DNA of 33,209 nucleotides. Origin: Octopus bimaculoides (Eukaryota). Shown one piece after another: positions 3,003 through 32,926 of this stretch (position 1 is the first letter of the stretch; each line of letters starts with the position of its first letter). The position numbers and the translations under genes were made by a program. Below the pieces are notes generated by a model. That model was not told where the DNA came from, did not search any database, and saw only the letters and a program-made list of their open reading frames with translations. Where the stretch lies: contig NC_069003.1 of assembly GCF_001194135.2 (NCBI RefSeq), forward strand, positions 18,282,502-18,315,710, in the 5' to 3' direction.

Positions 3003-3119
3003 ATAGAAAGGATTGAGGGAACTCCTCCTGAAGATATTGAGTTAAAATTAAAAGAAGAGTGCCATTGNNNNNNNNNNNNNNNNNNNNNNNNNNNNNNNNN
3101 NNNNNNNNNNNNNNNCATT

Positions 3120-4069: not shown

Positions 4070-4653
4070 ATGTTACCATCTGGGGACTATCTCTTACCCA
4101 TTGATAATAAAAAGACTGAAAGGAGGTCTGCAACCAAATAACTTTACTCAAAATAACACTTTGCAACTGAATCAGTAGAGGCAAAGATGCCTCTCCTTTA
4201 CTTGATAATTTATGCACCACACTGCAGAAATCACAATCTAAGTATATCTCAAAGCAAACTCTTAAACTGTTGTACCATTGAATTACAAATAATGCTCATC
4301 TTTTATGCTCGGGTGACGCTACAGCTTCCAAGAGTACAACTGTATTCGTCTTGNNNNNNNNNNNNNNNNGATGTTACCATCTGGGGACTATCTCTTACCC
4401 ATTGATAATAAAAAGACTGAAAGGAGGTCTGCAACCAAATAACTTTACTCAAAATAACACTTTGCAACTGAATCAGTAGAGGCAAAGATGCCTCTCCTTT
4501 ACTTGATAATTTATGCACCACACTGCAGAAATCACAATCTAAGTATATCTCAAAGCAAACTCTTAAACTGTTGTACCATTGAATTACAAATAATGCTCAT
4601 CTTTTATGCTCGGGTGACGCTACAGCTTCCAAGAGTACAACTGTATTCGTCTT
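4070..4653. other. Identical ~284-bp duplication flanking a short N gap (probable scaffolding artefact)
   Basis: 4070-4353 and 4370-4653 look identical and are separated only by Ns. Confidence 0.85.
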
Positions 4654-5280: not shown

Positions 5281-5675
5281 NNNNNNNNNNNNNNNNNNNN
5301 NNNNNNNNNNNNNNNNNNNNNNNNNNNNNNNNNNNNNNNNNNNNNNNNNNNNNNNNNNNNNNNNNNNNNNNNNNNNNNNNNNNNNNNNNNNNNNNNNNNN
5401 NNNNNNNNNNNNNNNNNNNNNNNNNNNNNNNNNNNNNNNNNNNNNNNNNNNNNNNNNNNNNNNNNNNNNNNNNNNNNNNNNNNNNNNNNNNNNNNNNNNN
5501 NNNNNNNNNNNNNNNNNNNNNNNNNNNNNNNNNNNNNNNNNNNNNNNNNNNNNNNNNNNNNNNNNNNNNNNNNNNNNNNNNNNNNNNNNNNNNNNNNNNN
5601 NNNNNNNNNNNNNNATTTACCATATATATGTATGTGTGTGTGTGTGTGTGTATACACACACGCACACACACACAC

Positions 5676-8028: not shown

Positions 8029-8986
8029 NNNNNNNNNNNNNNNNNNNNNNNNNNNNNNNNNNNNNNNNNNNNNNNNNNNNNNNNNNNNNNNNNNNNNNNN
8101 NNNNNNNNNNNNNNNNNNNNNNNNNNNNNNNNNNNNNNNNNNNNNNNNNNNNNNNNNNNNNNNNNNNNNNNNNNNNNNNNNNNNNNNNNNNNNNNNNNNN
8201 NNNNNNNNNNNNNNNNNNNNNNNNNNNNNNNNNNNNNNNNNNNNNNNNNNNNNNNNNNNNNNNNNNNNNNNNNNNNNNNNNNNNNNNNNNNNNNNNNNNN
8301 NNNNNNNNNNNNNNNNNNNNNNNNNNNNNNNNNNNNNNNNNNNNNNNNNNNNNNNNNNNNNNNNNNNNNNNNNNNNNNNNNNNNNNNNNNNNNNNNNNNN
8401 NNNNNNNNNNNNNNNNNNNNNNNNNNNNNNNNNNNNNNNNNNNNNNNNNNNNNNNNNNNNNNNNNNNNNNNNNNNNNNNNNNNNNNNNNNNNNNNNNNNN
8501 NNNNNNNNNNNNNNNNNNNNNNNNNNNNNNNNNNNNNNNNNNNNNNNNNNNNNNNNNNNNNNNNNNNNNNNNNNNNNNNNNNNNNNNNNNNNNNNNNNNN
8601 NNNNNNNNNNNNNNNNNNNNNNNNNNNNNNNNNNNNNNNNNNNNNNNNNNNNNNNNNNNNNNNNNNNNNNNNNNNNNNNNNNNNNNNNNNNNNNNNNNNN
8701 NNNNNNNNNNNNNNNNNNNNNNNNNNNNNNNNNNNNNNNNNNNNNNNNNNNNNNNNNNNNNNNNNNNNNNNNNNNNNNNNNNNNNNNNNNNNNNNNNNNN
8801 NNNNNNNNNNNNNNNNNNNNNNNNNNNNNNNNNNNNNNNNNNNNNNNNNNNNNNNNNNNNNNNNNNNNNNNNNNNNNNNNNNNNNNNNNNNNNNNNNNNN
8901 NNNNNNNNNNNNNNNNNNNNNNNNNNNNNNNNNNNNNNNNNNNNNNNNNNNNNNNNNNNNNNNNNNNNNNNNNNNNNNNNNNNNNN

Positions 8987-9858: not shown

Positions 9859-10843
9859 TGTAGAAGATGATGATGATAATATACATACATACATACATAC
9901 ATACATACATACATACATACATACATACANNNNNNNNNNNNNNNNNNNNNNNNNNNNNNNNNNNNNNNNNNNNNNNNNNNNNNNNNNNNNNNNNNNNNNN
10001 NNNNNNNNNNNNNNNNNNNNNNNNNNNNNNNNNNNNNNNNNNNNNNNNNNNNNNNNNNNNNNNNNNNNNNNNNNNNNNNNNNNNNNNNNNNNNNNNNNNN
10101 NNNNNNNNNNNNNNNNNNNNNNNNNNNNNNNNNNNNNNNNNNNNNNNNNNNNNNNNNNNNNNNNNNNNNNNNNNNNNNNNNNNNNNNNNNNNNNNNNNNN
10201 NNNNNNNNNNNNNNNNNNNNNNNNNNNNNNNNNNNNNNNNNNNNNNNNNNNNNNNNNNNNNNNNNNNNNNNNNNNNNNNNNNNNNNNNNNNNNNNNNNNN
10301 NNNNNNNNNNNNNNNNNNNNNNNNNNNNNNNNNNNNNNNNNNNNNNNNNNNNNNNNNNNNNNNNNNNNNNNNNNNNNNNNNNNNNNNNNNNNNNNNNNNN
10401 NNNNNNNNNNNNNNNNNNNNNNNNNNNNNNNNNNNNNNNNNNNNNNNNNNNNNNNNNNNNNNNNNNNNNNNNNNNNNNNNNNNNNNNNNNNNNNNNNNNN
10501 NNNNNNNNNNNNNNNNNNNNNNATATATATATATATAAAGTATGGGGCTTTAGTTCACAGGTGATCTAAATGACTAGGTATGCTAGGTAAGTGCTGTTAT
10601 TGAACGTTGATATGTTCACATCTTTTTTCTGGATGTTTACAATATCAGGACTTTAGCCCACATGGATTTACACAGGATTGCACCTAGGACTTGTGGACTT
10701 ATATCTACAACATCGGAAAGTTGAACTGTGAACTTTTATACTTTTATGCTTCTTTTTTCTTGTCTCTCTTCATCTCCTTATTCTTTTACTCCTGTCCTTT
10801 GTTGTCATTTCATTAATCTATACCCTTCTCATTTTCCCTATAT

Positions 10844-11383: not shown

Positions 11384-11446
11384 NNNNNNNNNNNNNNNNN
11401 NNNNNNNNNNNNNNNNNNNNNNNNNNNNNNNNNNNNNNNNNNNNNN

Positions 11447-11589: not shown

Positions 11590-12260
11590 ATCATCATCGT
11601 TTAACGTCCGCTTTCCATGCTGGCATAGGCTGGACGGTTTGACTGGGGACTTGTGAGCCAGATGGCTGCACCAGACTCCAATCTGATCTGGCAGGGTTTC
11701 TACAGCTGGATGCCCTTCCTAACGCCAACCACCATGAGAGCGTAGTGGGTGCTTTTACGTGCTACCGACAGGAGGGCCAGTAATGCGGTACTGGCAATGG
11801 CTACGCTCAAATGGTGTTTTTATGCGTCACCTGCACAGGAGCCAGTCCAGCGGCACTGGCAACGCCCTCGCTCGAATGTTGCTCTCCACGTACCACCGGC
11901 ACAAGTACTAGTAAGGCAACACTGGCAACGATCATGCTTGAATGGTGCTTTATACGTGCCACTAGCACGGGCGCCAGTCAGTGGCCCTGGCGATGATCAC
12001 ACTCAAATGGTGCTCTTAGCGCTCCACTAGCACAGATGCCAGTCATGCAGTGCTGTCAATGAATTTGATTTCGATTTCAATTTCCCTTCCCTCAACAGGT
12101 TTAGTGTCCAATGAAAGAAAGGTATGCCTAAGTGGGCTGGTTACACCACTAGCATAGGCCACAAGTTATGGTCTCACTTGGCTTGCCGGGTCTTCTCAAG
12201 CACAGCATATTTCCAAAGGTCTTGGTCACTAGTCATTGCCTCGGTGAGGCCTAATGTTTG
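11590..12260 (-). mobile_element. RTE LINE 3' end: ORF C-terminus, 3'UTR with ~62-bp tandem repeats, (GAT)n tail
   Basis: 12258->12174 reads TLGLTEAMTSDQDLWKYAVLEKTRQAK*. About 5 degenerate units at 11752-12050; GCGTTAGGAAGGGCATCCAGCTGTAGAAA box; ends GGACGTTAAACGATGATGAT. Confidence 0.85.
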
Positions 12261-12565: not shown

Positions 12566-12956
12566 CTTTACTCTTTTACTTGTTTCAGTCATTTGACTGT
12601 GGCCATGCTGGAGCACTGCCTTTAGTCGGGCAAATCGCCCCCAGGACTTATTCTATGTTAGCCTAGTACTGATTCTATCAGTCTCTTTTGCCGAACTGCT
12701 AGCTTACAGGGACGTAAACACACCAGCATCAGTTGTCAAGTGATGTTGGGGGGACAAACACAGACACACAAAAATACACACACACACATATACGACAGGC
12801 TTCTTGCAGTTTCTGTCTACCAAATCCACTCACAAGGCTTTGGTTGGCCCGAGGCTATAGTAGAAGACACTTACCCAAGGTGCCACGCAGTAGGACTGAA
12901 CCCAGAACCATGTGGTTTGTAAGCAAGCTACTTACCACACAGCCACTCCTGCACCT
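12566..12956 (-). mobile_element. tRNA-derived SINE family B, full length
   Basis: Minus-strand head AGGTGCAGGAGTGGCTGTGTGG (A box) ... GGGTTCAGTCC (B box), internal (TG)n, tail AGTAAAAGAGTAAAG. Confidence 0.85.
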
Positions 12957-13365
12957 ATATATATATATATATATATATNNNNNNNNNNNNNNNNNNNNNN
13001 NNNNNNNNNNNNNNNNNNNNNNNNNNNNNNNNNNNNNNNNNNNNNNNNNNNNNNNNNNNNNNNNNNNNNNNNNNNNNNNNNNNNNNNNNNNNNNNNNNNN
13101 NNNNNNNNNNNNNNNNNNNNNNNNNNNNNNNNNNNNNNNNNNNNNNNNNNNNNNNNNNNNNNNNNNNNNNNNNNNNNNNNNNNNNNNNNNNNNNNNNNNN
13201 NNNNNNNNNNNNNNNNNNNNNNNNNNNNNNNNNNNNNNNNTATATATAATCTAATTTAATTAGGGTGTGAACTGTTGAATTCCTTGTGGGAGTGCTTACT
13301 GTGGGTCTGCTTGATTTACTGAATCTAATTTTCTATTTTATTTGTGTGTGTGTGTGTATTGGTTT

Positions 13366-13824: not shown

Positions 13825-14078
13825 ATCATCATCATCATCATCATCATCATCATCGTTTAACGTCCGCTTTCCATGCTAGCATGGGTTGGACAATTTGACT
13901 GAGGACTGGTGAAACAAGATGGCTACACCAGGCTCCAGTCTGATTTGGCAGAGTTTCTACAGCTGGATGCCCTTCCTAACGCCAACCACTCCGAGAGTGT
14001 AGTGGGTGCTTTTACGTGCCACCGGCATGAAGGCCAGTCAGGCGGTACTGGCAACGGCCACGCTCAAAATGGTGTATT
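13825..14078 (-). mobile_element. RTE LINE/SINE 3' terminus with long (GAT)n tail, running into a gap
   Basis: High similarity to 11590-11820. Confidence 0.8.
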
Positions 14079-14821
14079 NNNNNNNNNNNNNNNNNNNNNN
14101 NNNNNNNNNNNNNNNNNNNNNNNNNNNNNNNNNNNNNNNNNNNNNNNNNNNNNNNNNNNNNNNNNNNNNNNNNNNNNNNNNNNNNNNNNNNNNNNNNNNN
14201 NNNNNNNNNNNNNNNNNNNNNNNNNNNNNNNNNNNNNNNNNNNNNNNNNNNNNNNNNNNNNNNNNNNNNNNNNNNNNNNNNNNNNNNNNNNNNNNNNNNN
14301 NNNNNNNNNNNNNNNNNNNNNNNNNNNNNNNNNNNNNNNNNNNNNNNNNNNNNNNNNNNNNNNNNNNNNNNNNNNNNNNNNNNNNNNNNNNNNNNNNNNN
14401 NNNNNNNNNNNNNNNNNNNNNNNNNNNNNNNNNNNNNNNNNNNNNNNNNNNNNNNNNNNNNNNNNNNNNNNNNNNNNNNNNNNNNNNNNNNNNNNNNNNN
14501 NNNNNNNNNNNNNNNNNNNNNNNNNNNNNNNNNNNNNNNNNNNNNNNNNNNNNNNNNNNNNNNNNNNNNNNNNNNNNNNNNNNNNNNNNNNNNNNNNNNN
14601 NNNNNNNNNNNNNNNNNNNNNNNNNNNNNNNNNNNNNNNNNNNNNNNNNNNNNNNNNNNNNNNNNNNNNNNNNNNNNNNNNNNNNNNNNNNNNNNNNNNN
14701 NNNNNNNNNNNNNNNNNNNNNNNNNNNNNNNNNNNNNNNNNNNNNNNNNNNNNNNNNNNNNNNNNNNNNNNGGGGGGGGGGGAGGTGTCTCAAAACACAA
14801 GGACTTAGAATCATACAATAT

Positions 14822-16997: not shown

Positions 16998-17471
16998 GGG
17001 TGGAAATGGAGGTGGAAACCTTTCAGAGTTATTTACTTTGAGTTGTTATTATCTCATATCTGATTAGTCTGTTATTATGTAACATGCTTCACGATTTTAG
17101 TATACATACCTTATTAGTATTTCCTCCTATGTTCTATATATTCTGGGAACGAATCAAAGTCCTTTTCAGGGCTATTTTATTTGAATTCTTGTTATTGGGT
17201 AAATAATTTCATGTTATTACATGACTTCACAATTTGGGTATTCATAACTTATTGGGAATTCCTAAAAACAAAATCCTGTATAAGACAGTTCAGTATTCTC
17301 TGTAAATACACAAAAGGCATTTTAAGGGCTACATTCTTTGTATTGTTGTTATTGGATTAGTGAAACGATTATGAGAAGGGAACCAAGGGATAAGCCCCAC
17401 TTTCCTGGGAATTACTGGGTATGTCAGCTAGTATATATATATATATATATNNNNNNNNNNNNNTGTGTGCA

Positions 17472-19985: not shown

Positions 19986-20002
19986 GTGTAAATATATATA
20001 CC

Positions 20003-20280
20003 TCTTATCTTTTACTTGCTTCAGTCATTGCACTATGGCCATGCTGGGGCACTGCCATGAAAGTTATTAGGTTTTTCAATCAAAAAAATTGATCCTAGTA
20101 CTTATTTTCAAAGCCTAGTACTTATTCTATTGGTCTCTTATGCCAAACTGCTAAGTTATAGGGATGTAAACAAACCAATACCAGTTGTCAATACTTTGGT
20201 TGGCCCAGGGCTATTGTAGAAGACATGTGCCCAAGGTGCACTGCATGGTTGGGAAGCAAATTTCTTCACCACACAGCCAC
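20003..20280 (-). mobile_element. SINE family B, internally deleted
   Basis: Homologous to 12566-12956 with deletions. Confidence 0.65.
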
Positions 20281-21898: not shown

Positions 21899-22295
21899 AA
21901 CTGCTATACTCCATTCTTAGCACTTCTCTTCTCTGCTATCATTCTCAATGCCCTCACATATCTACTATAGCACCCTACCTCATGAGTTATTCCTATATCT
22001 CCCATCATCACTTGCTACAGTTACCTGTACCTCATTCATCTCTTGCTATCTCTTCTCACACGCTTTTGAAACTTCTCTCTCTAACCTCCCACCCATTCAC
22101 CTCCAACCCACTCACCCAGTCCAATCCTCTGTACCACTTCAAGAGTGGCTGTATGGTAAGAAGTTTGCTTCACAATTACATGGTCAGTGGATTTGGTAGA
22201 TAAAGACTGGTCAGTGGATTTGATAGATAGAAACTGAANNNNNNNNNNNNNNNNNNNNNNNNNNNNNNNNNNNNNNNNNNNNNNNNNNNNNNNNA

Positions 22296-23627: not shown

Positions 23628-23831
23628 CAGGTGTAAGCATGGCTGTACGGTTGAGAACTTTGCTTCCTAACTATATAGTATCAGGTTCAGTCCCACAGCA
23701 CAACACCTTGGGCAAGTATCTTTTCTTATAGCCCTGGGCTGACCAATAATTTGAGTGGATTTGGTTGATGAAAACTGAAAGAAGACTGTTGTATATATAT
23801 ATATATATGAATATATATGTATGTGTGTGTA

Positions 23832-23876
<45 letters not shown>

Positions 23877-24953: not shown

Positions 24954-25229
24954 ATGGAGAACTGGAAGCCATCAGAATATTGGAAAAGAGTAACCTGTAT
25001 CACGATGACTTGTGCTGGGTGTCAAAATGATGATATCATAACTGCTGCTCGATGTTCTGTGAACACTTTAAAGGCAGTAAGACATGACATGGACAGCTTC
25101 AACAGAGACTATAAAGCTGTGGCCAGCAGGAAGGGATACAGCAGGTGTTCTGACTGTATCTGCACACTGGAATTCATCCAACAACTGCAGAACAGGGTGA
25201 TGGAAAATCAAAGCAAGGAAACCAAGGTG
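24954..25229 (+). pseudogene. Tc1/mariner (maT/DD37D-like) transposase, N-terminal part
   Basis: MENWKPSEYWKRVTCITMTCAG..CSVNTLKAVR..RKGYSRCSDCICTLEFIQQLQNRVMENQSK resembles the HTH region (RxxRTPEF..V.ENP motif) that precedes the segment at 25862. Confidence 0.55.
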
Positions 25230-25861
25230 TAGTAGAAGTGATTTACACTGTCATTGTGGGAGATGTTTTCATTTTGACTCATTTAGGCTTAAATACCCCA
25301 ATATCAGCTCCACAAGGCCTTTTGTTCCAGCAGTCACATGACTTTGTGATTAAACGAACCTGTTGTTTGTATTGGTCAGCTTCCAACTGTCCAATCGTGT
25401 TGGTGCAACAGTTTATTTTTCCTTACGTGGGAAATTAACCACCAGCTATGGGAGTCTATTATTCCCTATTAGTACCACAGTTCTTGACTGTTCTAGGTCT
25501 TTGGCACTCACCACTGACCACATGCAACTTGTCTCCAGCAACAATGTTTTGACTCCAGCCAGTCTCTGCTTTCAATTCCACCAGACACCTGTCTACATCA
25601 TTGCTTATGAAGACTACACGACCAACAGACCAACAGCTGCCTCTACACTACCAAACAGTACGTCAATTATGTCTACTACATCAACAGTCCAACCGAACTA
25701 CAAAGTTCTCTCACACATCCTTGTATTATAACCTGTTATGTTATGTTAATTTATGTATGGCAATCATTATATTCTATAATGAAGAATAAAATGTCACTTA
25801 CAATTTCAGTTGCAGTTTCAAGTTGTATATACATCATTCACATCATCCTCATTTACTCATC

Positions 25862-26278
25862 TTCATTATAAAGGCTTTGGTGAGAGAGATGGGTGTTGGA
25901 ATAGCCACCATGAAACTGGTCTTAATGGGGACCTTCACAACCACTTCTACAAGATGTTCAAGGGACACATTCTGAAAGCTTAGGCCAAAGAGAGTTACTT
26001 GTTGAAGGAAAAGAAGCTCCTGAAAATGCTGACGCATCCTGTTGAGCCAGGAATGATCTGGTTCTTCTCAGATGAAAAGAATTTCTATCAGGGCCAGTTG
26101 CACAACTCCCAAAATAACATACAGCCTGCATACAATCAGTGTGAAGTCTCATGTATCGTGAAAACCAAGTTGCCCCAAACTGTGATGTCTTTAGGTGTAT
26201 CTCCAGTAAGGGTGATGGTATGTCGCCTCATGTCTTTGAACAGGGTCTTAAGCTCAGGCTATGTGAAACTGGTATTAA
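25862..26278 (+). pseudogene. Tc1/mariner (maT/DD37D-like) transposase, central part with first catalytic D
   Basis: IKALVREMGVG..KLLKMLTHPVEPGMIWFFSDEKNFYQGQLHNSQNN..KTKLPQTVMSLGVS..EGDGMSPHVFEQGL; the WFSDEK, HNxQN and PxxVM motifs are present. Frameshifted. Confidence 0.8.
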
Positions 26279-26521
26279 GGGTAGTAAACTGGTGCATGAT
26301 AGGAGACTTGACAGTGAGTGACGTTGCTGGAGGTAAATAAGCAATGCTGCTAATAACAACAATGATGATCAAATGTATACCGGTTTCAATTGGCTGGCAG
26401 AGACGGAGTAAGAGATGATAAGATGGGAGTAAAATTCAATGATACACATAGAAGAAAACAGGAATAGAAATCATAACAACTGGTGTGTAGAATAAAATGG
26501 TTAAAATAATATTGCTATATC

Positions 26522-26566
26522 ATCTATGGCCATATCACGTTAAAAACATCGGTTCTTGTATTTGAT
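26522..26566 (+). pseudogene. 5S rRNA 5' fragment (about nt 1-45)
   Basis: ATCTATGGCCATATCACGTTAAAAACATCGGTTCTTGT aligns to the 5' end of metazoan 5S rRNA. Confidence 0.75.
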
Positions 26567-26832
26567 AGTATGAGTACCGTTGTGAAACTTGTAGTATAAA
26601 ACTAGCAGGCAGTGGTGGTTAGGATTGAATGACAAAGTAAATGTTGGCAACAGTTATTTCATTTTCTAATATAATCATTTGCAACTGCAGTTGCAGAGAG
26701 TCATTGAAATTTGTGCATGCAAATATCTATATAGAAGTGTGTGTGTAGGAAAACACAGACAAGACACACACTTAAACTAAAGCTAACTGCAATAATAAAA
26801 CGATTAGTTCGCATGCTTGTTAATTATGCAAT

Positions 26833-26860
26833 AAAAAACCTAAATAAAAAGGGATAAAAG
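26833..26860 (-). terminator. Pol III oligo-T terminator of the 5S copy
   Basis: CTTTTATCCCTTTTTATTTAGGTTTTTT follows the 5S 3' end directly on the minus strand. Confidence 0.55.
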
Positions 26861-26979
26861 ATGCTTATAGCACCTAGGTTTCCCAAGTGGTCACCCATCT
26901 AAGTACTAAATAGAATCAACATTGCTTAATTTTGGTGATCGGATGAGGACCAGTTTTTATATGTGATATGGCCATAAAC
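26861..26979 (-). pseudogene. Full-length degenerate 5S rRNA gene (119 nt)
   Basis: Minus strand GTTTATGGCCATATCAC...CCGATCACCAAAATTAAGCAATG...TTAGTACTTAGATGGGTGACCACTTGGGAAACCTAGGTGCTATAAGCAT. Box A- and box C-like elements are present, with many CpG-type transitions. Confidence 0.9.
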
Positions 26980-27069
26980 AATACTTCAAAATTATTTTAA
27001 CCATTTTATTCTACACACCAACTGAATATAGTAAACCATTCTCTGGTTCTGACTTCTATCTCTGTTTTC

Positions 27070-27848
27070 GGATCTAGTCTTTCTCATTTGCAAAATGAGC
27101 CTCCCCTTAATTTTTCTCAGAATGCTTTCAATTTTCGTGTATCGATACAACTCTGAATTTTGATTACAATCAACCAATTACTTTATCTCGTAAATTAAAG
27201 AATCTGATGTTATTTGGAATTAAAGTTGAGGTAATTTTGGCCAATCAACAGACAGCGTAGCATTAGCAGCTTGTTACCATGATAACCGTATGCTGTGTTG
27301 TGGTTCAATGTTGTCTGTGCCACTGTTGTCTATGTTGATTCTTCACACCACGAGATTCTTTTTACCTGTGTGTTTTGCTTTAATTTTTCTGTGTCTTAGT
27401 ATATTACATATTTTTCTATGCTTCTGTGTATTAGTATTTTTCTGTGTTAGTATTTTTACATATTTTTCATTTCATATATTTTTGGGACTCATTGACTCAG
27501 ATAGCTGGATTTATGATTTCACTAGGTTAATTTTATCCATAAAAATTTAAATAAGGAGTATTTCTTAAACCGTTAGCTTCACATTTCAACAGCTTGACTG
27601 AAATTTAGCCCACGTAACAGGAACTGAGAGGAATATTGTGGAACAGAGAAACTGTGGTGATACAGATAATTTGACATCATTTTTGAATTCTGCAAACAAA
27701 AACATGTAAGATACAGGTATTCTTTTTCCTAGGACAAATTATTTGTTGATGAGTGTTATTCTTATCATAGTTTACAAATCCAAGCATGAAAACGTTACTC
27801 AACTTTGGAGTTTTGGAGACAGACACTCCCTTTTCACACACACTCCCT

Positions 27849-27883
<35 letters not shown>

Positions 27884-28362
27884 TGCACTTATATATTAAT
27901 GATGTACACAAATACATGACAGGTATACATAATACTGAAATACGCATAAAGTAAACACATACACACAAATATATTAATATAAGTGATTAAAAAAGTAATT
28001 AAAAATACAATCAATGAAGAAACAAAAGAAACAGTAACATGATACATATTGATTTTATTAGGTATTTCTGTTTATTTAGAAACCTACAAGGAACAGGTCA
28101 GACACTGAACTATAAATTTCACAGGGTACAACCTTAAAGTTGACACCACTTTGCTAAACACAGAAAATTTGTCTCTATTTGCTAAAAATACTCAGTTGTT
28201 TTCGATTTTTAAACCTCTCTAACATTTTTCTCCAATTTTTTTCTCCACAACATCAAACCTTCAAAGCAATGAGACTGGAAGGCTACATTATTATAGCTGA
28301 TTTTCAGATTTTTTACTTCCTTTTAAAAAATGCATATTTTGAAAATGAGAATAACTAGATCC
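27070..28362. mobile_element. 1293-bp non-autonomous DNA transposon with 31-bp TIRs and perfect 8-bp TSD (Merlin-like or hAT)
   Basis: TIRs GGATCTAGTCTTTCTCATTTGCAAAATGAGC versus reverse complement GGATCTAGTTATTCTCATTTTCAAAATATGC (26/31); TSD CTGTTTTC at 27062-27069 and 28363-28370. Confidence 0.85.
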
Positions 28363-28828
28363 CTGTTTTCTTATATGTGTATTACTTTACTCACATTTCA
28401 TCATTTCTTACTTCGTCCAATTGAAATTGGTATACATCTGATCATCATTATTGATATTAGCAGCATTGCTTATTTACCTCTGACAACATCGCTCACTGTC
28501 AAGTTTCTTATGATGCACCAGTTTACTACACTTTATAATGGCTTTAGTAATGTGTGGCTATTGATGCATTTTCACAAGCACAATTTCCACAGAAGTGAAC
28601 TGAAACAGCTAGAAGCAAGCAAGCAAATGGTGAAATTTTCCTAAATGCTGTCATTGTTGTTAGAGTGTTTTTTTTTCTGTTTCCTTTTTTCATTCTATGT
28701 GCCAAAGAGTGTAAGCTCAAAACGCTAAAGACTTTTCCATTTTTACTGAGCATCAACAAACTGAGCCTTGTTTGTTGTTCTTTCACCTATCTCTGTCTTT
28801 TGTTTCTTGTTTTTTTGTGCATTTTGAA

Positions 28829-28872
<44 letters not shown>

Positions 28873-28994
28873 ACAACATTTATTAATTTCTTTGCTGACC
28901 AAAGCCTTGTGAGTGGATTTGGTAGATGGAAACTGAAAGTATCCCATCATGTGTGTGTGTGTGTATGTGTGTGTGTGTATATGTGTGAGAATGC

Positions 28995-29270
28995 ATGCGG
29001 TCTAGTGGCTAGGCTGTTGCACTCACAATCGCTAGATTGTGGGTTCAGTTTCTGGACTGAATGTCATGTTTTTTTAAGCAAAACACTTCATTTCACATTG
29101 CTCCAGTTCACTTGATTGTAAATGGGTAAACCTGCATCACAGTAGCCTTCTGGTTGGGGAGAATATTGGCCTGTTCACTCACCTAGGCATCATTCAAAAG
29201 CTAAAATGATGCAAAGTGCATTGTGACTAACAACAAATAACAACATCCAATAGTCTGGCTGATCATGCGA
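28995..29270 (+). mobile_element. tRNA-derived SINE, third variant
   Basis: A-box-like GGTCTAGTGG, B-box-like GGGTTCAGTT, CORE-like AGCAAAACACTTCATTTCACATTGCTCCAGTTCAC; followed by (TACA)n. Confidence 0.5.
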
Positions 29271-29735
29271 TACATACATACATACATACATACATACATA
29301 CATACATACATACATACATACATACATACATACATACAATGGATGGATTCTCTTGTCGTGAACAACAAGTGAGAGTTCAGTAAAATAAAGCATTGGTCAT
29401 GTTCTATGGACATGAGCGTGTCTCTTGAGGCCTGCTGGTGCCTTGCAAACCTTTAGGCAAATGGAACAAGTTGAGGACTCAGTTTTCTTGAGTGTTTGTG
29501 GATCATTTACTTTGTGTTTTCTTGAGTGGACAGCTCAAGGAATGATTACTTCACAATGTCCCTTGAAAAGCTAATTTAAATAGCAATAACCATAAAATAT
29601 GTATATATATTTTTTATAAAACGATATTAAAACTATGTGAAATGAAGGCATTTCTCTTTTTATATGTTTTCTACATATTTTCACTTCATAATTTTGCCAC
29701 GTGGTGTATACTGACCACCAGCATTTTTGCTCCTT

Positions 29736-29782
<47 letters not shown>

Positions 29783-30507
29783 TACATACATATATACATA
29801 TATNNNNNNNNNNNNNNNNNNNNNNNNNNNNNNNNNNNNNNNNNNNNNNNNNNNNNNNNNNNNNNNNNNNNNNNNNNNNNNNNNNNNNNNNNNNNNNNNN
29901 NNNNNNNNNNNNNNNNNNNNNNNNNNNNNNNNNNNNNNNNNNNNNNNNNNNNNNNNNNNNNNNNNNNNNNNNNNNNNNNNNNNNNNNNNNNNNNNNNNNN
30001 ATATATATATATATATATACTTATATACATACATATTATACACACTTACACCCAACCACCCACATACACTCATCTATATATCATTCTTTTTTCAAATGGT
30101 GGATCTTGAAGCATTTAAAGTGCTAAATAGTAGTGTATAACTATTGGGTTAAAAGGAAAACCTTTGGATAGAAAAGGTCAAAGGTTGTTGATAGGACATA
30201 GAATCCAAATCTGCAACCATGATAAGCATTCTACTACTATTTTAGTATGGAAACAAAATGCATGTTTCTCCAGCAGTTGATAAAATAGGAGTAAAAAGTA
30301 TATTATGGGAGGTGAAAATAACAGGAATGGGTTAAATATAAAGTGAAAAAGATAAAAGAAAACTTCTGAGCCAATGAGATCTGTTAAGGAGATTAAGAGA
30401 TTATTGAAAATCTAGTTTTTGTTGTGATGATTAGTATCACGTTATAGGTCATTGATTGTGTGTAATTGGGGTGGGGAGAGAAAGAGAGAGAGAGCGAGAG
30501 AGAAAAA

Positions 30508-32372: not shown

Positions 32373-32926
32373 CTAGCGTAGGATTTGTACAGGGTCAAGC
32401 GGGTTTACCAATACTTGGAAAAGACAAAGAGGACTATATGTAGACAAAAAACTGTTCTCATATTTTCTATTAAGAAGAAGCGGTTTAGCCGTTAGAATTT
32501 CCAGGTGTTCAGTTAAACAGAGATCACACCGTCTATTTGTAGAGTTGTAAGTTGTTTTTGCGAGTATGCGCCATTTTAATCTATATTCTATTTTTTTTTG
32601 TCCTTAAGCTCCCAGATATAGCTACTAAGCCCTGTTGAATTTGCCTTACTCCTATTTCTGAAGCTAGATTGGTGTGCATTGTACCGAAGTATCATTTGGT
32701 TTTTCGTGGCTCCTATATAGGATTTTATATGACTATTTGTGTGTATGTCACATTGGTAAACTACGTTTTTAGTCTTACATCTATTAGAGAATTGGCACTT
32801 ACTTCTATCCCTACAACCACATAAATTATTAAGTATATCTGTGTTCGTGTTATGTTGTGATGAAAAGTCTAGCCAGGATATTAAATAATTTTTTTTGGTT
32901 GCTGGACTGAAAGTTAGGGAAGCCAT
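32373..32926 (-). pseudogene. Penelope GIY-YIG endonuclease domain, frameshifted
   Basis: CGCRDRSKCQFSNRCKTKNVVYQC..SYIGATK..RYNAHQSSF..STGLSSYIWELKDKK; after a frameshift in the A9 run (32591-32599) it continues IEYRLKWRILAKTTYNSTNRRCDLCLTEHLEIL..LLNRK. Confidence 0.85.

What the first reader, a model, noticed from the sequence alone, without database searches (positions are those of the whole stretch)
26281..28529. Hidden inverted duplication: two convergent 5S rRNA units with shared ~240-bp upstream spacer
Seen: removing the MITE (27070-28362 plus one TSD) shows the left arm 26281-26566 (+) is the inverted homolog of 28529->28363 plus 27061->26935. Exact anchors are GTAGTAAACTGGTGCAT (26281-26297 / 28513-28529), a 26-mer (26330-26355 / 28455-28480) and a 30-mer (26481-26510 / 26991-27020), each arm running into a 5S 5' end. 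The right copy is full length with an oligo-T terminator; the left stops at about nt 45. The shared upstream flank and terminator argue against retroposition (SINE3). Inference: either an orphon pair from a 5S array, or a ~950-bp long-TIR/foldback element whose arms carry Pol III 5S promoters pointing inward, a possible route for 5S dispersal or dsRNA production. I do not know such an element to be described in cephalopods.
Basis: partly seen in the sequence, partly recalled or inferred. Interest (0 to 1): 0.75.

Follow-up and report, generated by a model that had tools for sequence, protein, structure and literature searches.

The report
Inverted duplication around a 5S pseudogene
An old, decayed copy of the 5S ribosomal RNA gene next to a dead transposon was partly duplicated in mirror image and later hit by another transposon; it looks like ordinary genomic debris in an octopus-type genome, not a new mobile element or a working gene pair.

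Summary
After removing a 1,293-bp non-autonomous DNA transposon (27070-28362; 8-bp target-site duplication (TSD), 27-nt terminal inverted repeats), 26273-26568 (+) is the inverted homologue of 28537->28371 plus 27069->26933. That is 277 aligned nt at 84.8% identity. All three exact anchors are real.

Only one Rfam-detectable 5S exists (26862-26979, minus strand, 82 bits). It is a decayed pseudogene: 38% GC, one CpG, about 14 broken pairs. The left "unit" is a ~47-nt 5' stub.

Identity is uniform across outer flank, spacer and 5S head. The exact 30- and 26-mers are within chance for 85% identity, so nothing points to constraint.

The left arm abuts a frameshifted Tc1/mariner-type (DDE_3) transposase relic (24972-26271) and probably continues it in frame to 26337. 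The relic does not resume beyond the right arm. I found no TSD and no further copy.

Best reading: one old, local inversion-with-duplication (staggered breaks or template switch) of a 5S orphon pseudogene beside a transposon relic, later hit by a transposon. A mobile 5S-carrying foldback element is not supported, but it cannot be excluded without a whole-genome search. Low interest.

The parts
24972..25229 (+). N-terminal (helix-turn-helix) part of a Tc1/mariner-type (DDE_3) transposase relic
   Evidence: tblastn with full-length relatives (P0028 aa 3-79, P0092 aa 8-96) and an HMM of 16 full-length relatives, positions 4-82, i-E 1.9e-7
25921..26271 (+). Middle part of the same transposase relic, with the first catalytic-D region IWFFSDEKNF. 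It is frameshifted near 26200-26255. About 690 bp of unrelated sequence separates it from the N-terminal part.
   Evidence: the search for homologous proteins E 6.7e-25 to 9e-16, with relatives carrying PF13358; alignment; tblastn 26035-26295/26337; HMM positions 98-208, i-E 4.6e-19. The C-terminal third (HMM 209-338) is absent from the whole window.
26273..26521 (+). Left arm, upstream-flank part. The first 25-65 bp (to 26295/26337) probably still belong to the transposase reading frame (VLRVVNWC...VAGGK). The AT-rich AATAAAA lies about -31 to -25 from the 5S start.
   Evidence: Inverted homology. Same open frame as the relic, with VV in register with relatives, but the stand-alone test gives only p~0.06.
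26522..26568 (+). Left 5S remnant (5S nt 1 to ~47). A weak, collinear resemblance of 26570-26600 to 5S nt 81-115 suggests it may be an internally deleted copy.
   Evidence: Alignment to the right copy. Tail similarity 12/500 shuffles. No Rfam hit at E<=10.
26569..26861 (-). Single-copy middle segment, which is the downstream flank of the right 5S. It contains T4/T5/T6 runs at 26833-26859, a (GT)n/(AC)n hairpin near 26727-26770, and a perfect 16-nt palindrome at 26680-26695.
   Evidence: No significant similarity to the arms or the relic in either orientation. T runs and palindrome read directly.
26862..26979 (-). Full-length but decayed 5S rRNA pseudogene
   Evidence: Rfam RF00001 82.3 bits (gathering score 38), model 1-120, about 14 non-standard pairs. 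GC 38%, one CpG. MFE z-score only -2.1.
26980..27069 (-). Right arm, 5S-proximal part of the upstream flank (includes TSD copy 27062-27069)
27070..28362 (.). 1,293-bp non-autonomous DNA transposon (MITE-like) inserted into the right arm after the duplication. 27-nt TIRs GGATCTAGT..., 8-bp TSD CTGTTTTC, internal tandem repeats and (CA)14.
   Evidence: TIR pair I14; TSD and the empty-site paralogue in the left arm; tandem repeats; no coding homology
28363..28537 (-). Right arm, distal part of the upstream flank (first 8 nt are the second TSD copy). Homology to the left arm ends at 28537.
   Evidence: The flank 28538+ is unrelated to the sequence upstream of the left arm.

Best explanation
This is a single-locus, old, neutral rearrangement with no evident function.

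Inferred ancestral state: one 5S rRNA orphon pseudogene, with about 185 bp of its own upstream sequence and T-run terminators, lay directly after the broken 3' edge of a Tc1/mariner-type transposase relic.

One rearrangement inverted the segment running from inside the relic's last recognisable codons (a = 26273) to about 295 bp beyond the 5S (c). It left a second, uninverted copy of the ~290-bp stretch a-b, where b is about 5S nt 47. The product is relic-[a..b]-rc(b..c)-rc(a..b)-flank, which is exactly the observed order. This is the signature of an inversion made by staggered breaks at one end (Ranz et al. 2007) or, equivalently, of a replication template switch.

Both copies then decayed at the same rate, to about 15% divergence with CpG loss and indels. 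A 1.3-kb non-autonomous DNA transposon then inserted into the right arm, making an 8-bp TSD.

Shown: the duplication, its extent and divergence, the insertion, the pseudogene state, and the adjoining transposase relic.

Inferred: the one-step mechanism, the ancestral order, and the lack of function.
For: - The arm alignment and exact anchors are real.
- Identity is uniform in the outer part (0.85), inner spacer (0.86) and 5S head (0.81). That fits one event followed by neutral decay, with no extra conservation of the 5S.
- The longest exact runs are within expectation for 85% identity.
- Only two novel junctions are needed. The left copy keeps ancestral continuity outward: the transposase relic runs 24972-26271 and in the same open frame to 26337. 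The right copy keeps continuity inward: full 5S plus terminators.
- The right outer flank is unrelated to the relic, and the relic's C-terminal third is nowhere in the window.
- There is no TSD at the outer ends (direct reading).
- No other copy appears in the window, in 20.6 kb of Octopus bimaculoides, among 5.8 billion proteins using arm-derived peptides, or in five exact-pattern scans of the metagenome, prokaryote-genome and viral contig collections.
- Duplicate size and identity match published inversion-associated inverted duplications: median 321 bp, ~88% identity, often at one breakpoint only (PMC1885836).
- Pseudogene state: 38% GC, one CpG, ~14 broken consensus pairs. The left stub is not recognised by Rfam.
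Against: - The ancestral, uninverted arrangement was not observed because no outgroup locus was available.
- Taken alone, the in-arm continuation of the transposase frame is only suggestive (p~0.06 left arm, not significant right arm). The arm boundary could therefore coincide with the end of the relic, as an insertion would predict.
- No cephalopod genome could be searched, so 'no other copy' rests on tiny samples.
- Cephalopod genomes can hold very many 5S-derived loci (~24,000 in the giant squid, PMC6962438), so a dispersed family is plausible a priori.
- A possible 5S 3' tail in the left copy (p~0.02) would move breakpoint b and imply uneven decay.
Confidence: 0.65

Rival explanations
1. 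The two arms are copies, or the two long terminal inverted repeats, of a dispersed repeat family. One candidate is a ~965-bp Tc1/mariner-derived non-autonomous long-TIR or foldback element that carries a 5S gene and its upstream promoter. It would have inserted at the edge of an older transposase relic.
For: Robust transposase homology stops within a few codons of the arm boundary, and the in-arm extension is not independently significant. Both arms begin with TA, the Tc1/mariner target dinucleotide. 5S-derived loci are extremely abundant in at least one cephalopod. DNA transposons and other transposable elements carrying rDNA-derived sequence are known (PMC10946416).
Against: The relic does not resume after the right arm. 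A terminal TA is expected by chance in AT-rich DNA. The arms are 15% diverged with large indels. The left arm stays in the relic's open reading frame with VV in register. No third copy turned up anywhere searched. The arms end asymmetrically inside the 5S.
Confidence: 0.17
2. This is a remnant of a genuine 5S rDNA array, an orphon pair. Two neighbouring units in opposite orientation have decayed in place, with a Tc1/mariner element once inserted in the spacer.
For: The right copy is full length with Pol III-type T runs and an AT-rich AATAAAA at about -30. Tc1/mariner insertions in 5S spacers are reported in fish (PMC10946416).
Against: There is no tandem organisation. The 295 bp downstream of the right 5S shows no similarity to the upstream arm, so any unit would exceed ~650 bp with no neighbouring unit in 33 kb. 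The two copies share derived changes relative to the 5S consensus (TATGG, CATATCAC, TAAAAAC), so they descend from one already-diverged copy. One copy is cut at nt ~47.
Confidence: 0.13
3. This is an assembly artefact: a chimeric palindrome in a gap-rich draft assembly.
For: The window has 11 runs of N.
Against: The arms differ by 15% plus indels, and one arm carries a clean transposon insertion with a TSD. There is no N run between 22295 and 29803.
Confidence: 0.02

Closest known systems
Inversion-associated inverted duplications from staggered breaks (Ranz et al. 2007, Drosophila; PMC1885836)
   Same: An inverted pair of formerly single-copy sequence flanks an inverted unique segment. The duplicate is ~290 bp (published median 321 bp) at ~85% identity (published ~88%). 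Duplication occurs at one breakpoint only, and the copies decay by substitutions and small deletions.
   Different: Here the inverted segment is tiny (~0.37 kb unique, ~0.66 kb in all) rather than a chromosomal inversion. The ancestral order was not verified in an outgroup. A replication template switch would leave the same product.
5S rRNA orphons and dispersed 5S pseudogenes (Rfam RF00001 hits outside arrays; ~24,000 5S-derived loci in Architeuthis dux, PMC6962438)
   Same: A solitary, mutated 5S copy outside any array, recognisable by the covariance model, with CpG depletion.
   Different: It retains upstream flank and T-run terminators and has been partly duplicated in inverted orientation.
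SINE3 / 5S-derived SINEs
   Same: 5S-derived sequence dispersed in an animal genome.
   Different: T4-T6 runs follow the 5S immediately. No LINE-derived body or tail and no TSD around the 5S are evident on reading the sequence. The second copy shares 250 bp of upstream sequence, which shows DNA-level copying.
Cassandra (plants) and Ajax (nemerteans) TRIM retrotransposons with 5S in both terminal repeats (PMC10946416, PMC10886601)
   Same: 5S-derived sequence is present in both terminal repeats of a short unit.
   Different: Those repeats are direct LTRs with PBS/PPT and 5-bp TSDs and keep the box A/IE/box C promoter. Here the repeats are inverted, one lacks the promoter region entirely, and no PBS/PPT was sought or seen.
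Tc1/mariner (IS630-Tc1-mariner, Pfam DDE_3) transposons, including insertions in 5S spacers of fish
   Same: A transposase relic of this superfamily lies immediately upstream of the 5S flank.
   Different: Only the N-terminal and middle parts survive, with frameshifts and a ~690-bp interruption. No TIRs were found, and the C-terminal third, where the later catalytic residues would lie, is missing.

Membership tests
5S rRNA gene (Rfam RF00001) | Covariance-model score at or above the gathering threshold over the full model | tested here: met
   Right copy 26862-26979 (minus strand): 82.3 bits against 38, model 1-120. Left stub: no hit at E<=10.
5S rRNA gene (functional) | Intact helices and an internal control region (box A, intermediate element, box C) able to bind TFIIIA | tested here: not met
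   About 14 consensus pairs are non-standard. GC is 38% with one CpG. The intermediate element reads CTATTT, and the box A and C regions carry several changes. The left copy lacks nt ~48 onward. Binding itself was not assayed.
SINE3 / 5S-derived SINE | 5S-derived head that reads through into a LINE-related body or tail, flanked by TSDs, in many copies | tested here: not met
   T4, T5 and T6 runs start 3 nt after the 5S 3' end. The downstream 295 bp has no repeat or tail features. Copy number is not testable here.
Cassandra/Ajax-type TRIM | Direct long terminal repeats carrying the 5S promoter | tested here: not met
   The repeats are inverted, not direct.
Long-TIR / foldback DNA transposon | Defined termini flanked by a target-site duplication | tested here: inconclusive
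   There is no direct repeat at 26265-72 against 28538-45. Only a shared terminal TA, which is uninformative (direct reading).
Long-TIR / foldback DNA transposon | The interrupted host sequence resumes on the far side of the element | tested here: not met
   The C-terminal third of the transposase relic is absent right of 28537 and everywhere in the window.
Long-TIR / foldback DNA transposon | Multiple genomic copies with the same ends | not testable with these tools
   No cephalopod genome is searchable. There were zero further copies in the window, in L001 (20.6 kb of O. bimaculoides), in the protein database and in three DNA collections.
Tc1/mariner DDE_3 transposase | Significant homology to family members across the catalytic domain | tested here: met
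   E 6.7e-25 to 9e-16 against P0001-P0004, two of which carry PF13358. HMM of 16 full-length relatives, i-E 4.6e-19. Pfam itself does not call the degraded translation.
Tc1/mariner DDE_3 transposase | Complete reading frame with the full catalytic domain, plus TIRs | tested here: not met
   Frameshifts, a ~690-bp interruption, a missing C-terminal third and no TIR partner.
Inversion with staggered-break duplication | The duplicated stretch is single-copy and the segment uninverted in the ancestral or outgroup arrangement | not testable with these tools
   This needs the orthologous locus from related octopus genomes.
Inversion with staggered-break duplication | Layout flank-[a..b]-rc(b..c)-rc(a..b)-flank with only two novel junctions | tested here: met
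Non-autonomous cut-and-paste DNA transposon (MITE-like) | TIRs, a TSD and an empty site | tested here: met
   27-nt TIRs (24/27), perfect 8-bp TSD, paralogous empty site in the left arm. Superfamily is not assigned. An 8-bp TSD fits hAT, Merlin or P; this rests on my own knowledge and was not tested.

The most novel reading that the evidence does not exclude
The ~965-bp unit (26273-28537 without the later insertion) is one old copy of an undescribed octopod non-autonomous DNA transposon. It would have ~290-bp inverted arms derived from a Tc1/mariner element, each arm carrying a 5S gene start with its upstream promoter. On this reading, 5S copies are spread by cut-and-paste transposition rather than by retroposition.
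Probability: 0.08. Interest if true: 0.6.

Novelty: new member of a known kind. Interest (0 to 1): 0.12.

Why it matters
It matters little for biology. The locus shows no sign of selection, no intact Pol III gene and no evidence of mobility.

It has two modest uses. First, it is a clean worked example of a micro-inversion with an inverted duplication whose second arm serves as an internal empty site for a later transposon insertion. Second, it is a caution for rRNA annotation in cephalopod genomes: the right copy passes Rfam's threshold comfortably although it is a pseudogene.

Only the low-probability mobile reading would be of wider interest, as a DNA-transposon route of 5S dispersal in genomes known to hold very many 5S-derived loci.

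Tried and rejected
- **Third arm copy after the left stub.** I suspected a diverged direct copy because of the repeat TGTGAAACTGGTATTA (26262 and 26581). The score is at shuffle level, so I rejected it.
- **Inverted symmetry through the middle segment.** Only a (GT)n/(AC)n hairpin scores. The downstream flanks give z=1.7, not significant.
- **Remnants of the transposase C-terminus.** I looked in the inner spacer, the middle segment and right of the right arm and found none.
- **TIR partner of the relic.** I compared the region upstream of 24972 with the spacer, middle and right flank. Only microsatellite matches appeared.
- **Constraint on the exact 30-mer at -12 to -41.** It is not beyond chance.
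- **Pfam on the relic translation and on ten window ORFs.** Nothing was found.
- **tRNA scan.** None found.
- **Exact-protein look-ups.** ORFs 25999-26340 and 28330-28644 are not on record.
- **Exact-pattern scans.** Two scans of metagenome contigs, two of prokaryote genome contigs and one of viral contigs gave 0 hits. These collections probably hold no cephalopod DNA, so the negative is weak.
- **Profile search with arm-derived peptides.** No hit against 5.8 billion proteins.
- **Published squid 5S sequence.** I tried to read it (PMC326244) for a proper reference; the paper is not held.
Full report
**1. The observation**

The sequence was read directly. The repeat finder reports inverted pairs 26273-26393/28417-28537 (121 nt, 88%) and 26481-26546/26955-27020 (66 nt, 85%). 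It also reports a 27-nt TIR pair at 27070-27096/28336-28362. A sensitive self-BLAST of 26000-28700 against the whole window finds these pairs and nothing else apart from microsatellites.

The 8-mer CTGTTTTC flanks 27070-28362 on both sides. The left arm carries its complement once (26454). Deleting the insertion plus one TSD gives a gap-free join in the arm alignment. The left arm is therefore a paralogous empty site, and the insertion post-dates the duplication.

A global alignment of 26273-26568 with the reconstructed right arm gives 277 aligned positions at 84.8% identity, ts:tv 32:10 and K2P 0.174, with indels including runs of 9, 5 and 22 nt.

**2. The 5S copies**

Rfam finds one 5S in the window: 26862-26979 on the minus strand, 82.3 bits (gathering score 38), covering model positions 1-120. 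It has about 14 non-standard pairs, 38% GC and a single CpG. Its fold is only marginally better than shuffles (z -2.1). T4, T5 and T6 runs follow within 30 nt (26833-26859).

The left copy matches 5S nt 1 to ~47. Rfam does not recognise it even at E<=10 on a 121-nt slice. A collinear resemblance of 26570-26600 to 5S nt 81-115 reaches only 12/500 shuffles, so the left copy may be an internally deleted 5S rather than a clean truncation. I leave this open.

Both copies share departures from the 5S consensus (TATGG, CATATCAC, TAAAAAC). They therefore descend from one already-diverged copy.

**3. No sign of constraint**

Arm identity is 0.85 in the outer 65 nt, 0.86 in the inner spacer and 0.81 in the 5S head. 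A run of 30 or more identical bases is expected in 25% of simulations at 85% identity. A 30-mer plus a 26-mer together occur in 7%. The perfectly conserved 30-mer at -12 to -41, which contains an AT-rich AATAAAA near -30, is therefore not evidence of selection.

**4. What the 'spacer' abuts**

The open frame 25999-26340 and its upstream continuation resemble Tc1/mariner-type transposases. Four database proteins match at E 6.7e-25 to 9e-16, and two of them carry Pfam DDE_3 (PF13358). A profile search returned thousands of relatives.

I built an HMM from 16 full-length relatives (338 positions). It places positions 4-82 at about 24987-25229 and positions 98-208 at 25921-26255, with frameshifts and about 690 bp of unrelated DNA in between. 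Several tblastn alignments run on in the same frame to 26286-26337 (VLRVVNWC...VAGGK against VLxxVVxPWC..VAGGR), which is 15-65 nt into the left arm.

Taken alone, this in-arm peptide is only suggestive: p~0.06 for the left arm and not significant for the right. So robust homology ends at, or just inside, the arm boundary.

The C-terminal third of the transposase is absent from the inner spacer, the middle segment, the region right of the right arm and the rest of the window. No TIR partner of the relic was found. The right outer flank is unrelated to the sequence upstream of the left arm, and the middle segment is unrelated to the arms.

**5. Source organism**

The only database relative of ORF 32588-32926 (minus strand) is an Octopus bimaculoides protein at 64% identity. 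I fetched its 20.6-kb locus (GCA_001194135.2, CM046613.1). It shares many interspersed repeats with the window at 70-98% identity. The window therefore comes from this species or a close relative.

None of those shared repeats fall in the arms, the middle segment or the insertion. L001 holds no 5S.

**6. Mechanism**

The left copy preserves ancestral continuity outward, into the transposase relic. The right copy preserves it inward, through the whole 5S, its terminators and ~295 bp downstream. Only two junctions are new: ~26568/9 and 28537/8.

The layout relic-[a..b]-rc(b..c)-rc(a..b)-flank is what a small inversion with staggered breaks at one end produces. The sequence between the staggered nicks is filled in and ends up at both ends of the inverted segment, in opposite orientation. 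Ranz et al. found this at 59% of Drosophila inversions, often at one breakpoint only, with a median duplicate of 321 bp and ~88% identity (PMC1885836). A replication template switch would give the same product. I cannot separate the two, and the ancestral order is inferred rather than observed.

**7. Rivals**

A mobile long-TIR/foldback element carrying 5S would need TSDs, resumption of the interrupted relic and further copies. None was found. There is only a trivial terminal TA. The relic does not resume. No third copy appears in the window, in L001, in a profile search of 5.8 billion proteins with arm-derived peptides or in five exact-pattern scans.

These negatives are weak because no cephalopod genome could be searched. 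The giant squid has about 24,000 5S-derived loci (PMC6962438), so I keep this rival at roughly 0.17.

An array remnant is unlikely. There is no tandem structure, there is no similarity between the downstream and upstream flanks, and one copy is cut inside the gene.

An assembly artefact is excluded by the 15% divergence, the indels and the clean insertion in one arm only.

**8. Comparison with known systems**

The known 5S-bearing mobile elements are SINE3-type SINEs and the Cassandra/Ajax TRIMs, which carry 5S promoters in direct LTRs (PMC10946416; PMC10886601). The present structure fails their defining features. T runs follow the 5S directly, no tail is present, and the repeats are inverted rather than direct.

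Tc1/mariner insertions in 5S spacers are reported in fish, so the neighbourhood itself is unremarkable.

**9. Verdict**

Its interpretation as a pair of inward-pointing Pol III units or as a new mobile element is not supported. It is best read as decayed debris: a 5S orphon pseudogene beside a dead transposon, partly duplicated by a local inversion and later hit by a non-autonomous DNA transposon. Interest is low. The one test that could raise it is a whole-genome search for further copies.

Noticed in passing
window 24972-26337 (+): Degraded Tc1/mariner-type (DDE_3) transposase relic. The N-terminal part lies at 24972-25229 and the middle part at 25921-26271(-26337). About 690 bp of unrelated DNA sits between them. 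It has frameshifts, no C-terminal third and no identifiable TIRs.
   Followed up: yes
window 27070-28362: 1,293-bp non-autonomous DNA transposon with 27-nt TIRs (GGATCTAGT...) and a perfect 8-bp TSD. Inside are a 26-nt tandem repeat (27383-27468), a 17-nt repeat (27819-27860) and (CA)14. The superfamily is not assigned, and the window holds no other copy.
   Followed up: partly
window 26680-26695 and 26727-26770: A perfect 16-nt palindrome, TGCAACTGCAGTTGCA, and a (GT)n/(AC)n hairpin lie in the single-copy segment between the two 5S copies. Both are close to the centre of the inverted structure. They could have favoured a fold-back or template switch; this was not tested.
   Followed up: no
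window 32588-32926 (-): A 112-aa ORF whose only database relative is an uncharacterised Octopus bimaculoides protein (64% identity). It is probably part of a repeat family. I used it to place the window in an octopus-type genome.
   Followed up: partly
window 28894-28984, 12566-12978, 13827-14078, 11590-12123, 327-514, 19989-20191, 23637-23840 and others; L001 several sites: Short interspersed repeats shared with a 20.6-kb O. bimaculoides locus at 70-98% identity, several in multiple copies per locus and so SINE-like. One lies about 360 bp right of the right arm.
   Followed up: no
window 3068-3115, 4354-4369, 5281-5614, 8029-8986, 9930-10522, 11384-11446, 12979-13240, 14079-14771, 17451-17463, 22239-22294, 29804-30000: Eleven runs of N (assembly gaps), most of them bordered by microsatellites. 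None falls inside the feature studied.
   Followed up: yes
window 29267-29348 (-): Sub-threshold Rfam matches to mir-297 and mir-1277 fall on an (ATAC)17 microsatellite. They are low-complexity artefacts, not microRNA genes.
   Followed up: yes
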